NCBI GenBank assembly: GCA_964057225.1
Contig: OZ059897.1
Location: forward strand, 13,144,001 to 13,208,000
Length of the DNA stretch: 64,000 nt
Source of the DNA: Auanema rhodensis
Lineage: Eukaryota > Animalia > Nematoda
Reading direction: 5' to 3'
Part shown: one piece after another, positions 9,301 to 12,300 of the stretch
How positions within the stretch are numbered: position 1 is the first letter of the stretch
How the letters are laid out: each line of letters starts with the position of its first letter
Translations under genes and position numbers: made by a program
Notes under the pieces: model-generated
The model's input: the letters and a program-made list of their open reading frames with translations, nothing else
Databases searched by the model: none
What the model was told of the DNA's origin: nothing

Positions 9301-12300
9301 AGGTTAATAAAAAATGTTTCAAATTTTAACACAAACCTGTTTTATAGACTTTTGTTCTGGAGTATCATCCTTAGTAGGCATTAAATTAGATGAATAAGTT
9401 AAAGGTTGCTTGCTCAATTGTGAAAATAGATTTGTACCGACTTGCCCATATTGATTAATAATACGAGCTTAAAAAATATCGTTGAAAAATATTGTAAACC
9501 AAAATTCATACGATGTTGCCAATGATGCTCATTCCGTGTCTGCCCTCGCTTACTCTCCTCTTCTTGGCGCATTAGTTCCTCCTCTCTTCAAAGAATTACG
9601 TTCACCCCTTTTTTTTAAAAAAATTACCTGGCAATGGCTTCAGCAATAGCTCTCTCTTCATCTTCATTGGATTCAAATTCAAAACGGTATGGACGAGAAG
9701 GAAGTCTACACATGCCACATAAATGTTATCATTGGTATATTTAGTAACCTCATATTATCCACAATCCCCCGTTTCATACAAAACTCCTTATAGCTCGTAA
9801 TTCTCCGATTAGCAATATGAATAGATCCTCGATAGCCATTCTAAAACAAACCATACATAACAACGATAAAACAATGAAGACAGCGTAATGATTCAGAAAT
9901 ACGGCACCAGAAGAAGAATTGTGGTGCGGTAGCAAAAAAATTTCGATTTCCGCCTGAAGCTCTCAATCGAAGACAGATTCTACAGAAACGCTTCTCTTTA
10001 TTTCACCCACACGTATCACACAATATGTCGCAAATCGTGTGAGGTCACGAACAAGATTAGAATTCAAAATTTTTATCAGCATAAAACGCTACACAATTAT
10101 TTATATGCACACTAATAAACATAAAAAAGAAAGTAAAAACAAATTATACTCGTCATTTAGAATAAGACAACATTAGTTGGACGTCAAAGTGAAAAGTAGA
10201 AATCTGAGAAATCAAAACCTCACACGATCAACGAATATTATGAGAGCACGAGATGACTTAATAAAGAGTAAAGCGAACAAATAGAAATCTCAAAAAACTC
10301 GCGCTTTGCCGGTTGGGGACAGACAGAAGCGAGTATAGCTATTGCTCCATGGTAGGGTGGAAATCACCAATAAAATCACCATCAACCACAAATTCTTCTC
10401 CATAGCCAACAATATCTTCATCATGAGCTGTACTTGAACTCTGAAAAGAGCAGTGTGCTATGAATAATACTGGGCATTGCTTACCGCCTGCATCACTTGA
10501 CTGACGGGAACGCCTGAGCTGTTTCTAGATATGATTCTTTGAACAGGTCGCCCATAGCCATATGCTTGTGCTACTCTAGCCGGAGGCCTACCAGGTGGTC
10601 TTATTCCCTGCTCGGCCATTTGGGTATATTCCTTAATTTATTGTCTTAGTCAGGAACCCGTTATAGAACCTTACATCAACAGATGGGTTATCACCATAAT
10701 AAACCTGATCAGTACGAATAGGAACAGGCCTACTAGGTCGTCGAACCAATTGAACATTAGGTTGTCCTGACATTACTCCAGGATTTCCAGTAGCTAGCTT
10801 ATCTACAGGAACCCTTTTGACAAAAGATTCATCACTAGGTTCAACACGAGAAACAACTCGTGACTGAGTTGAGGCAACAACTTGCTGCCCATTTTGACCA
10901 ATTCTCAAAACTTTGGCTGCTCCATCTACAGGACGCACCATTGCAGTTCTGATTGGCCGTGCCGTAGTTATAATACGCCTCTGAACAGAGCCAGCCCCTC
11001 CCATAACGGTTTGATCAGATGATGTTGAACTAAATAATAAAATATACCCAAACAAAAAAAAACAATCTCATACGGATTAGATTGATTTACAACAGCGCGA
11101 ATAACAGTACTGCTGGAGCTTGGAGTAGTTTCTCCGTCTTTTGCATTAACAGGGCGTAAAAACTGAGTTGACCCGTCTGATCTTCTAATCATCAACACCT
11201 TGCCATTTTGAGTTTGCCTCTGAAAATATAATAACTTTCGAGCAACAGAAAAATGGGCAATACCTGTACAGGTGGCTGCGAATAAACAACTTGGCGTGGT
11301 TGCGGACGTGTTACTAAAGGAGACCCATATCCACTTCCAGGACTATCGAAACGTTCGATATTTGGAGGAGCATCAACACCACCAGCAGCACGAACAACTC
11401 TAGTCTGATTTGGAGTTTGGCCTGAACTAGCCACGACTTCTTCCGCACCAAGTTGCGAAGGTATACCACTCGAAATGGCTACCCTCCTCATGCCGTCCCC
11501 AACCGGCTGTAAATCAATGATTAATTGAAAAATAGACTTTCGTTTAAAAAAAAAGCTGAACGTTTAAACATCAGGTTTATGAAGATTAAATAGAAAAAAT
11601 TTTAGTTGGCGCGCTAACGTTTAACAGCGTCCTCGACACGTGATCGAAAGAAAAACGCGGCAGGTCGCGACGCGGTCAAAATTGCAAGAAGAGCAGATTA
11701 ATGTGAACGGAGCGCAATTAGTTTATCTAATCGTATATAATCTTATAAAATCTTAATCTAATCAAAGAATCAAATCTAAATTACCTGTGGACCTAATCTC
11801 CCACCACCTCTTATCATTCCACCGCTATATTCATAACCGTGAGATGTTCTTCTATTTGGACTAGCAGGAGACTCTTGTGATGTAAATACAATCCGAGCAC
11901 GTTTGGCAACTGAAGATTCGGTTGATTAAAAAAATATATTCAATTTTAACCTGATGGCTTAACATGATCATCAAAGTCTTGAAACTCAACGTCATCATAA
12001 GCATAATCCTAAAAAAATAATAAAATTTTTAAACATAAACTTCTATACCGTATTTCGTGTAGGAACAATGGGACGCTTTCGTCTTTCCATCTGAAGCTGC
12101 GCTAACGGTAACCTCGAGCTATGTTGTACATTCAAGGAGGTGTCTAAAAATAAATAATAAGTGAAATATTGTTTTAAAACGTACATCTCTGATGTTGTGA
12201 AATAGGTATTACTGCTCTGGGCACACTGTGATATCTTTCCACAACTGGAACAGAAGGAGGAAGTTTTTCCCAGGAAAAAATTGGCTTCGAAAGCTGCTCT

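What the first reader, a model, noticed from the sequence alone, without database searches (positions are those of the whole stretch)
10308..11507. Long-range RNA duplex candidate linking the internal start exon and the internal terminal exon of nurf-1
Seen: GCCGGTTGGGGAC at 10308-10320 is the exact reverse complement of GTCCCCAACCGGC at 11495-11507 (13 bp, 10 G/C, in AT-rich DNA). In the minus-strand transcript, one arm is the last G of the acceptor plus the first 12 nt of the exon following the candidate internal promoter. The other arm sits 19-31 nt after the stop of the internal terminal exon. With two 1-nt bulges and G-U pairs the helix extends (GGCA/UGUC, GAGG/CUUC) over the candidate AUG at 11491. 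The two arms bracket exactly the exons shared by both isoform classes. Inference: the duplex could couple promoter use or trans-splicing to skipping of the terminal exon or poly(A) site, or could silence the short start-to-internal-stop transcript by hiding its AUG. I know of no described mechanism of this kind for nurf-1.
Basis: partly seen in the sequence, partly recalled or inferred. Interest (0 to 1): 0.8.

Follow-up and report, generated by a model that had tools for sequence, protein, structure and literature searches.

The report
Conserved RNA helix enclosing nurf-1 short transcript
Two short complementary sequences in the nurf-1 gene, one at the start of the internal start exon and one just after the internal stop, have stayed able to pair through matching changes across distant nematodes; this suggests a testable reason why the gene's most abundant short transcript yields no protein.

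Summary
GCCGGTTGGGGAC (10308-10320) and its exact reverse complement (11495-11507) are unique in the window, and no shuffle produced such a repeat (0 of 300).

The gene, on the minus strand, is a nurf-1/BPTF orthologue. The organism is not C. elegans; the closest relative found is Auanema sp. JU1783. RNA contigs confirm that one arm is the acceptor G plus the first nucleotides of exon 14. The other arm lies 19-31 nt after the stop of the internal terminal exon.

I fetched the nurf-1 locus from seven other nematodes.
- Six have an unsplit gene: Auanema JU1783, Ancylostoma caninum, C. auriculariae, C. bovis, C. sp. 36 and C. elegans. All six have a 13-15 bp helix at the same two places.
- There are three sequence versions, linked by changes on both strands (G-C to U-A, C-G to A-U and others).
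- C. remanei, where nurf-1 has split into two genes, has lost both arms.
- In three Caenorhabditis species the complementarity continues into the SL1 spliced leader.

The helix is therefore an old, selected RNA structure. Its function is untested. Most likely it closes the short SL1-exon14-to-exon16 transcript (nurf-1.q) and blocks its translation. Published work found q abundant but its protein undetectable. Control of terminal-exon choice is the main rival. I found no prior description.

The parts
11493..11507 (-). 5' arm of the helix: last G of intron 13 (11507) plus the first 14 nt of exon 14. The perfect 13-nt core is 11495-11507. It encodes P-V-G-D-G in the B isoform and is 5' leader for the D/q start.
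   Evidence: The first 27 exon nt (11506-11480) are identical to Auanema JU1783, including all 8 degenerate codons (P about 0.0015); with the acceptor CAG the identical run is 30 nt.
10308..10322 (-). 3' arm of the helix, in the 3'UTR of the internal terminal exon. The perfect 13-nt core is 10308-10320, at +19 to +31 after the stop.
   Evidence: It is the only part of this 3'UTR shared with A. caninum and Caenorhabditis, apart from one 12-nt motif shared with A. caninum.
11470..11492 (-). Purine-rich 5' flank that may lengthen the helix over the D/q AUG (11491-11489).
   Evidence: Not significant against shuffled flanks (P=0.13). One compensatory G-C to A-U change relative to JU1783.
10323..10347 (-). 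Pyrimidine-rich 3' flank that may pair with the AUG flank. It includes the B/q stop codon TAG (10341-10339).
11264..11506 (-). Exon 14 equivalent, the first shared exon. It contains the internal start ATG at 11491-11489 (MRRV...).
   Evidence: Joints. The MRRV start matches the C. elegans q and D isoforms.
10485..11219 (-). The remaining shared exons: 11219-11074, 11029-10674 and 10630-10485.
   Evidence: Joints; translation.
10057..10440 (-). Internal terminal exon (exon 16 equivalent). Coding sequence runs to the stop at 10341-10339, followed by the 3'UTR. Contigs end at about 10057 and 10125.
   Evidence: X3 record 8 and X4 record 12, with depth about twice that of the upstream contig. The contig break at 10485-10488 marks the alternative-splicing branch.
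11507..11784 (-). Intron 13 (278 nt), the presumed site of the internal promoter and outron for the D and q transcripts.
   Evidence: Joint 11506/11785. Promoter use here is inferred from C. elegans, not shown in this organism.
9749..9840 (-). Exon 17 equivalent, the first D/A-specific exon. The 3' arm is intronic when exon 15 splices here.
   Evidence: Sequence and reading frame. The boundary at 9749 is in the contigs. The 10485-to-9840 joint was not among the rows shown.
9905..10337 (-). Non-coding block nearly identical between the two Auanema-like genomes: the 3'UTR of the terminal exon and beyond. The cause is unknown.
   Evidence: About 96% identity with a perfect stretch of about 170 nt, against 65-73% in the shared coding exons 14-16 and 35-52% in introns.

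Best explanation
The two arms form an intramolecular RNA helix of 13-15 G+C-rich base pairs. One strand is the very first nucleotides of exon 14, plus the G that precedes them. The other strand is the start of the 3'UTR of the internal terminal exon 16. The helix is old and under selection (shown by comparison of species).

Both arms lie in sequence retained in mature RNA, and they co-occur only in transcripts that end at exon 16.

My best reading of the function is inferred, not shown. The helix acts on the short transcript that starts at exon 14 by SL1 trans-splicing and ends at exon 16 (nurf-1.q in C. elegans).
- In q, the 5' strand begins 22 nt from the cap and the 3' strand follows the stop codon, so the whole q reading frame is closed into a loop.
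- The leader next to the cap, and in Auanema perhaps the AUG, is locked in a stable helix. In Caenorhabditis the helix reaches about 24 bp by also pairing the last 8-10 nt of SL1. Ribosome loading or scanning is blocked.
- The D mRNA has the same leader and AUG but has spliced out the 3' arm, so it stays translatable.
- In the B mRNA the 5' arm lies about 4 kb into the reading frame and is opened by translating ribosomes.

The helix would thus silence an unavoidable by-product of the overlapping Yin/Yang gene layout.
For: In this window:
- Exact 13-bp complementarity; 0 of 300 shuffles gave one.
- Arm positions confirmed by RNA contigs.
- The first 27 nt of exon 14 are identical to Auanema JU1783 at every synonymous site (P about 0.0015). 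This is the longest identity run in the coding exons.

Across species:
- All seven unsplit loci have the helix at the same two places. They are the window, JU1783, A. caninum, C. auriculariae, C. bovis, C. sp. 36 and C. elegans.
- Both-strand changes keep pairing. Position 5 goes G-C to U-A, position 13 goes C-G to A-U, and positions 14-15 change to C-G/C-G or U.G/C-G.
- In each species an unbiased scan of -4 to +5 kb picks the 3'UTR site as the best partner, z = -5 to -7.
- Outside Auanema the arm is essentially the only conserved piece of this 3'UTR.
- C. remanei (split genes) has lost both arms in both daughter genes. Its best partner is only -17 kcal/mol, against -28 to -39 in unsplit species. 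It still keeps another Caenorhabditis 3'UTR motif, CGGGTT.

Pointers to the q transcript:
- In C. bovis, C. sp. 36 and C. elegans the 3'UTR next to the arm also complements the 3' end of SL1. The SL1 context gives -38 to -42.5 kcal/mol against -25 to -32 for the intron or exon 13 contexts. P is 0.004 or less against shuffled tails, and SL1 ranks in the top 0.6-2% of random contexts.
- ViennaRNA gives pair probability about 1.0 for the helix in q-type and pre-mRNA models of the window and of C. elegans.

Literature:
- In C. elegans, nurf-1.q is the most highly expressed transcript, but no Q protein is seen on an immunoblot of a tag placed just before the exon 16 stop. The tag design leaves the 3' arm intact (PMC6752949).
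- Translation of trimethyl-capped mRNAs needs sequence and structure within the 22-nt spliced leader (PMC3203607).
Against: - No experiment or structure-probing data shows that the helix forms in vivo or affects translation.
- The SL1-exon 14 start and a q-type transcript are not shown for this organism. The contigs only show the cis-spliced exon 13-14 junction.
- The SL1 extension is absent in Auanema, and weak in A. caninum and C. auriculariae (10-13% of random contexts). In the window the case for q rests on arm placement alone.
- The extension over the AUG is not significant.
- A 13-15 bp helix starting 22 nt from the cap and closing a 1-kb loop may be opened by initiation helicases.
- The arms are also present in all pre-mRNAs, so a nuclear role is not excluded.
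- The covariation rests on seven species and a handful of independent events. C. bovis has two uncompensated edge positions.
- Loss in the split clade rests on one genome, plus one mRNA contig of unknown species (L002).
Confidence: 0.45

Rival explanations
1. The helix forms on the nascent RNA and controls the 3' end choice. It places the exon 15 donor and the exon 16 acceptor inside one loop, or alters definition of the terminal exon or its poly(A) site. This shifts the choice between exon 16 (B, q) and exon 17 (D, A). Because the helix is longer when the 5' end carries SL1, it could let the cell tell internal-promoter transcripts from upstream-promoter transcripts.
For: - Both arms are in every pre-mRNA, and folding predicts the helix there too.
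- The 3' arm lies between the exon 16 acceptor and its poly(A) region.
- The published work names exactly this unexplained need: a way to distinguish transcripts with exons 1-15 from those starting at exon 14.
- Helix strength differs with 5' context in Caenorhabditis.
- Loss in the split clade fits this model equally well.
Against: - A purely nuclear element could sit in intron 13 and in the downstream intron. Instead both arms sit in retained sequence, and the 5' arm constrains the protein (PVGD).
- q (SL1 plus exon 16) is the most abundant transcript in C. elegans. The helix therefore does not steer SL1 transcripts away from exon 16, and steering them towards exon 16 would work against making D.
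- The poly(A) signals lie outside the loop.
Confidence: 0.3
2. The helix is a binding platform for a double-stranded-RNA-binding protein (Staufen-like, ADAR or an export/retention factor). It sets the stability, localisation or nuclear retention of exon 16-containing mRNAs (B and/or q), and does not block initiation directly.
For: - The stable G+C-rich helix is conserved in mature B and q RNAs.
- q is unusually abundant yet gives no protein, which nuclear retention or protection from decay would also explain.
Against: - If the helix were needed for B itself, it should have survived in the B gene of the split clade. It did not.
- 13-15 bp is short for ADAR or Dicer substrates.
- No editing-type differences appeared in the contigs, though contigs drop rare variants.
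Confidence: 0.12
3. The arms act as reverse-complementary matches. They bring the exon 15 donor close to the exon 14 acceptor and promote back-splicing into a circular RNA of the shared exons.
For: The arms flank the shared exons, and in D/A-type splicing the 3' arm is intronic.
Against: - The 5' arm is exonic and includes the G of the acceptor AG, so the helix would mask the site it should present.
- The terminal exon's coding part lies between the exon 15 donor and the 3' arm.
- The SL1 extension makes no sense for back-splicing.
- No 'goes back' joint was among the listed joints, but contigs are poor evidence of absence.
Confidence: 0.05
4. There is no RNA function. The match is chance, a DNA-level element such as a pair of inverted protein-binding sites, or a side effect of coding constraint on PVGD.
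For:
- The 5' arm is coding, and the peptide PVGDGM is conserved in strongylids.
Against: - The non-coding arm changes in step with the coding arm in three sequence versions.
- It is the best partner in all seven species.
- It is lost together with its partner when the gene splits.
- A protein-binding site would not be expected to covary as a reverse complement.
- The arms are single-copy, so they are not transposon ends.
Confidence: 0.05

Closest known systems
Yin/Yang isoform layout of C. elegans nurf-1 (Xu et al. 2019, eLife, PMC6752949)
   Same: Same gene and same layout. B ends at an internal terminal exon, D starts at an internal exon, and the two share a few exons. The short q transcript runs from the internal start to the internal stop. 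The layout is lost in the clade where the shared exons duplicated.
   Different: That paper describes no RNA structure; a search of its text for hairpin, base pair, complementary and inverted found nothing relevant. It leaves open how isoforms are told apart and why q gives no protein. The window comes from an Auanema-like rhabditid with four shared exons where C. elegans has two.
Conserved long-range complementary regions in pre-mRNAs (PCCRs; Kalmykova et al. 2021, PMC8052449) and the Drosophila long-range structures that steer splicing
   Same: Two short complementary boxes about 0.8-2.5 kb apart in one transcript, conserved with compensatory changes, and placed at sites of alternative processing.
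   Different: Those boxes are mostly intronic and act on splicing or polyadenylation. Here both boxes are kept in the mature RNA, one at the extreme 5' end of a trans-spliced mRNA and one just after a stop codon. In Caenorhabditis the pairing includes the spliced leader itself.
5'UTR-3'UTR base pairing within one mRNA (p53 mRNA, flavivirus cyclization sequences); cited from my own knowledge
   Same: A leader sequence pairs with a 3'UTR sequence of the same molecule, closes it into a loop and affects translation or replication.
   Different: Here the pairing would be isoform-selective. The same leader is free in D and locked in q, depending only on which terminal exon is used. An effect on translation is inferred, not shown.
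SL1 trans-splicing remodelling the structure of pri-let-7 in C. elegans (PMC4509930; abstract seen)
   Same: A precedent in nematodes for trans-splicing deciding which RNA fold a transcript adopts.
   Different: In let-7, trans-splicing remodels the primary transcript and facilitates Drosha processing. Here the added SL1 would itself become part of a helix with a distant 3'UTR.

Membership tests
Conserved long-range RNA base pairing (PCCR-type element) | Two complementary regions of 10 nt or more in the same transcript, more than chance gives | tested here: met
   13 perfect bp (15 with G.U and G-C); 0 of 300 shuffles; z = -5 to -7 in unbiased scans of seven species.
Conserved long-range RNA base pairing (PCCR-type element) | Conservation of both regions at orthologous positions | tested here: met
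   Same two positions in seven unsplit loci spanning Auanema, Ancylostoma and Caenorhabditis.
Conserved long-range RNA base pairing (PCCR-type element) | Compensatory substitutions that keep pairing | tested here: met
   Positions 5, 13, 14 and 15 change on both strands. 10 of 12 changed cells stay paired. C. bovis has two uncompensated edge positions. There are few independent events.
Conserved long-range RNA base pairing (PCCR-type element) | Physical evidence of pairing in vivo (PARIS, RIC-seq, DMS) | not testable with these tools
   Only thermodynamic prediction is available (pair probability about 1.0).
Leader-to-3'UTR pairing that represses translation | Both arms present in one mature mRNA, with the 5' arm upstream of its start codon | tested here: inconclusive
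   Met for C. elegans q from annotated isoforms P0061/P0064 and the locus sequence. In the window, the terminal exon and the exon 14 boundary are shown, but a transcript starting at exon 14 is not.
Leader-to-3'UTR pairing that represses translation | Measured effect on translation | not testable with these tools
   Indirect evidence only: the Q protein is not detected despite the highest transcript level (PMC6752949).
Reverse-complementary matches that drive circular RNA formation | Arms lie in the introns flanking the circularised exons | tested here: not met
   The 5' arm is exonic apart from one base and overlaps the acceptor. The 3' arm is in a terminal-exon 3'UTR.
Reverse-complementary matches that drive circular RNA formation | Back-splice junction reads | not tested
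   The single reads call returned contigs only, and none of the listed joints goes back.
nurf-1/BPTF orthologue with the Yin/Yang layout | DDT/WSD N-terminal part, PHD/bromodomain C-terminal part, an internal terminal exon and an internal MRRV start | tested here: met
   - Protein matches across 16787-6654 on the minus strand.
- The JU1783 orthologue carries DDT and WSD domains, followed by PHD and bromodomain.
- The terminal exon is seen in RNA.
- The P[VF]G[DE]..MRR motif is shared with unsplit Caenorhabditis species.
Transposon terminal inverted repeats | Multiple copies in the genome, and arms bounding a mobile segment | tested here: not met
   Each arm occurs once in 64 kb. The enclosed segment is conserved host coding sequence.

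The most novel reading that the evidence does not exclude
The helix acts as a record of where the transcript began. Only RNAs whose 5' end was made by SL1 trans-splicing at exon 14 form the long version, which includes SL1. That version, forming on the nascent RNA as the 3' arm emerges, decides whether the internal terminal exon is used, or whether the product is exported and translated. This would directly couple trans-splicing and promoter choice to the fate of the 3' end, the discriminating mechanism that the nurf-1 literature says must exist.
Probability: 0.25. Interest if true: 0.9.

Novelty: new variant of a known kind. Interest (0 to 1): 0.8.

Why it matters
nurf-1 is a well-studied case of two opposing isoforms made from one gene, and of how such a gene later splits in two. 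Two questions were left open in print: how the cell keeps the isoform classes apart, and why the most abundant transcript, q, gives no protein.

A helix that is conserved with compensatory changes from Auanema and hookworms to C. elegans is a concrete candidate answer. It encloses exactly the q reading frame, reaches into the spliced leader, and disappears when the gene splits. It can be tested with a few genome edits in an existing tagged strain.

It would also be a clear case of an RNA structure constraining protein sequence: the peptide PVGD is kept inside the fastest-evolving part of the protein. It would be an example of isoform-selective silencing by pairing between a leader and an alternative 3'UTR.

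Tried and rejected
- **C. elegans identity.** A published guide sequence from exon 16 has no match in the window.
- **Rfam.** A scan of 9500-11900 found nothing above noise.
- **Metagenome scan.** A search with a 24-mer from the near-identical 3'UTR block gave 0 hits.
- **Protein search.** The representative search with the largest shared exon gave one hit only, Auanema JU1783. No other close relative could be reached.
- **Failed look-ups.** Four gene look-ups failed because the protein is not the longest product on record. I therefore have no Necator or C. briggsae locus.
- **Extension over the AUG.** The helix extension in the window is not better than shuffled flanks (P=0.13), and cross-species hybrid duplexes are as stable as native ones. 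I do not count it as evidence.
- **Second inverted repeat.** The repeat in the introns around 11029-10674 (I2) is weak and absent in JU1783.
- **Transposon ends.** Rejected because the arms are single-copy.
- **Leader accessibility.** Predicted accessibility in D-type against q-type models differs for the arm (P(unpaired) 0.31 against 0.00), but this is model-dependent.
- **Formal covariation tool.** Not used, because it needs a typed structure string thousands of characters long. I made the counts in scripts instead.
- **Reads.** The one reads call returned assembler contigs, so isoform ratios, SL1 junctions and back-splices could not be measured.
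Full report
**1. The observation**

On the + strand, 10308-10320 reads GCCGGTTGGGGAC and 11495-11507 reads its exact reverse complement. Each occurs once in the 64-kb window. 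The window is 33% G+C. It holds 11 perfect inverted repeats of 13 nt or more within 1.5 kb, and this is the only G+C-rich one. None of 300 whole-window shuffles and none of 300 block-wise dinucleotide shuffles produced such a repeat. A post-hoc pick from a very large scan can still be chance, so I looked for independent evidence.

**2. Gene and transcripts**

The gene lies on the minus strand from about 16787 to at least 6654. It matches the NURF-1 B protein of Auanema sp. JU1783 and the C-terminal D isoform of C. elegans. It is not C. elegans: a published exon 16 guide sequence has no match. The only close protein in 1.8 billion representatives is from Auanema sp. JU1783, at 65% identity in the shared region.

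Contigs of four RNA runs give these exons:
- an upstream exon ending at 11785
- 11506-11264
- 11219-11074
- 11029-10674
- 10630-10485
- a terminal exon from 10440 to about 10057-10125

The stop is TAG at 10341-10339.

In two runs the contigs break at 10485-10488, as expected at an alternative-splicing branch. The next exon (9840-9749) is homologous to C. elegans exon 17. A transcript that starts at exon 14 by trans-splicing is not shown in these contigs. I infer it from the conserved MRRV start and from C. elegans.

**3. The closest relative**

The JU1783 locus (L001) has both 13-mers unchanged, and the second again lies 19-31 nt after the stop.

The first 27 nt of exon 14 are identical between the two genomes, including all eight degenerate codons. 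Only 44.5% of conserved degenerate codons in exons 14-16 are otherwise identical (P about 0.0015), and the next-longest identity run in these exons is 12 nt.

The 3' arm is part of a 19-nt identical island flanked by variable bases. Beyond that island comes a non-coding block of about 430 nt at about 96% identity. The shared coding exons 14-16 are 65-73% identical and introns 35-52%. That block is unexplained. It means the 3' arm's conservation within Auanema is weak evidence on its own.

**4. Distant relatives**

I fetched nurf-1 loci through annotated proteins. Every unsplit gene has the helix at the same two places: the acceptor G plus the first 14 nt of exon 14, and 3-54 nt after the exon 16 stop.

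| Species | 5' arm | 3' arm | Pairing |
|---|---|---|---|
| window, JU1783, C. auriculariae | GCCGGTTGGGGACGG | CTGTCCCCAACCGGC | 13 perfect + G.U + G-C |
| Ancylostoma caninum | GCCGGTTGGGGACGG | CCGTCCCCAACCGGC | 15 perfect |
| C. bovis | GCCGGTTGGGGAA | TTCCCCAACCGGC | 13 perfect |
| C. sp. 36 | GCCGTTTGGGGAACC | GGTTCCCCAAACGGC | 15 perfect |
| C. elegans | GCCGTTTGGGGAATC | GGTTCCCCAAACGGC | 13 perfect + U.G + C-G |

Changes on both strands keep the pairing:
- Position 5 changes from G-C to U-A.
- Position 13 changes from C-G to A-U.
- Positions 14-15 change to C-G/C-G or U.G/C-G.
- A. caninum turns a G.U into G-C.

Of 12 changed cells, 10 remain paired. The two exceptions are edge positions in C. 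bovis.

The 5' changes alter amino acids (PVGD, PVGE, PFGE), and the non-coding arm follows them. An unbiased scan of -4 to +5 kb around the exon 14 start picks the 3'UTR site as the best partner in all seven species, with z = -5 to -7. Outside Auanema the arm is essentially the only part of this 3'UTR that is conserved. The peptide PVGDGM is also present in Necator, Trichostrongylus, Ostertagia and Angiostrongylus proteins, and absent from clade III and IV orthologues.

**5. A natural experiment**

In a clade of 11 Caenorhabditis species the shared exons duplicated and nurf-1 became two genes. The a and q transcripts were lost there (PMC6752949).

In C. remanei (L007) neither arm exists.
- The B gene's exon 14 equivalent starts CCATACGCGC, and its 3'UTR lacks the motif.
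- The D gene keeps the MRRV start but not the arm.
- The best partner found by the same scan is only -17 kcal/mol, against -28 to -39 in unsplit species.
- The B 3'UTR still keeps another Caenorhabditis motif, CGGGTT, so the loss is specific to the arm.

B proteins of C. briggsae, C. tropicalis and C. remanei, and three unnamed transcript-derived proteins, all lack the P[VF]G[DE]..MRR motif. One such mRNA contig (L002) lacks both arms. A function needed by B itself should have survived in the B gene. The loss instead ties the helix to the overlapping layout.

**6. Which RNA does it serve?**

Both arms lie in sequence retained in mature RNA, even though an intronic position would have avoided constraining the protein. 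Mature RNAs holding both arms are B and the short q transcript.

In C. bovis, C. sp. 36 and C. elegans the bases just after the 3' arm also complement the last 8-10 nt of the SL1 spliced leader.
- Duplex energy with the SL1 context is -38 to -42.5 kcal/mol.
- With the intron or exon 13 context it is -25 to -32 kcal/mol.
- P is 0.004 or less against shuffled tails, and SL1 ranks in the top 0.6-2% of random contexts.

The SL1 sequence is confirmed from papers. In C. bovis and C. sp. 36, exon 13 ends in A, so the B mRNA even loses the first pair. This extension is weak in C. auriculariae and A. caninum and absent in Auanema, so it is a Caenorhabditis feature.

ViennaRNA predicts the helix with probability about 1.0 in q-type and pre-mRNA models of both the window and C. 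elegans. In C. elegans q it becomes a helix of about 24 bp starting 12 nt from the cap.

**7. Literature**

Xu et al. 2019 (PMC6752949) report the following for C. elegans:
- q is the most highly expressed nurf-1 transcript.
- An HA tag placed just before the exon 16 stop reveals B but no Q protein ('not translated or rapidly degraded').
- Some mechanism must distinguish transcripts with exons 1-15 from those starting at exon 14; otherwise a and q are by-products.

Their tagging oligonucleotide leaves the 3' arm intact. Their text mentions no such structure. My searches of the paper library for nurf-1 together with structure, duplex, circRNA, ADAR or dsRNA found no description. Efficient translation of trimethyl-capped nematode mRNAs needs sequence and structure within the 22-nt leader (PMC3203607).

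**8. Mechanism**

Shown: an old, selected complementarity at fixed positions.

Inferred: the helix closes the q reading frame into a loop and locks its cap-proximal leader, so q is not translated.
- D has the same leader but lacks the 3' arm, so it is free.
- B has the 5' arm deep in its reading frame, so ribosomes open it.

I give the structure about 0.9 and this function about 0.45.

The main rival (0.3) is a co-transcriptional role in choosing exon 16 or exon 17, possibly using the SL1-dependent difference in helix length to sense the promoter of origin. It fits the loss in the split clade equally well. It fits less well with the exonic placement of both arms and with q being the commonest product. 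Binding of a double-stranded-RNA-binding protein, circular RNA formation and chance are less likely, for reasons given under the rivals.

**9. Limits**

- The sample is seven unsplit species and one split genome, with few independent substitution events.
- There are no in vivo structure or translation data.
- The reads call gave assembler contigs only.
- The SL1-exon 14 start is not shown for this organism.
- The helix extension over the AUG in the window is not significant.

Noticed in passing
window 9905-10337 (minus strand); L001 16600-17030: The 3'UTR of the internal terminal exon and about 150 nt beyond its poly(A) region are about 96% identical to Auanema sp. JU1783, with a perfect stretch of about 170 nt. 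The neighbouring shared coding exons 14-16 are 65-73% identical and introns 35-52%. There is no Rfam match and no similarity in Caenorhabditis. The cause is unknown: it could be a dense regulatory 3'UTR, an embedded RNA gene or promoter, or a recent exchange between lineages.
   Followed up: partly
window 10218-10229; L005 18765-18777: The motif GATCGTGTGAGG in the B 3'UTR is shared between the Auanema-like genomes and Ancylostoma caninum. Apart from the 3' arm, it is the only other shared piece of these 3'UTRs.
   Followed up: no
L003 about 11229-11240, L004 about 11372, L006, L008, L007 and L002 3'UTRs: All Caenorhabditis B-type 3'UTRs examined carry a CGGGTT-centred motif (for example TTTTCGGGTTT). 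This includes C. remanei and the unnamed mRNA contig L002, which have lost the helix arms. It may be a B-specific 3'UTR element.
   Followed up: no
window 9749-10440: In runs X1 and X2 one RNA contig runs unbroken from the terminal exon through its 3'UTR into exon 17, then on into downstream exons. This may be read-through or intron-retaining RNA, or an assembler path joining isoforms.
   Followed up: no
window 11492-11506 (peptide PVGDG) and proteins P0002, P0004, P0005, P0010, P0032, P0036: The peptide PVGDGM at the exon 14 start is invariant from Auanema to several strongylid genera, although it sits in the fastest-evolving part of the protein. The RNA helix, and not protein function, may be what conserves it.
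   Followed up: partly
L001 17147-20488; L006 16966 onward; L008 11947-13709: Public annotations of several unsplit species model the D-specific part as a separate downstream gene and miss the shared exons. Automated gene models therefore hide the overlapping layout.
   Followed up: no
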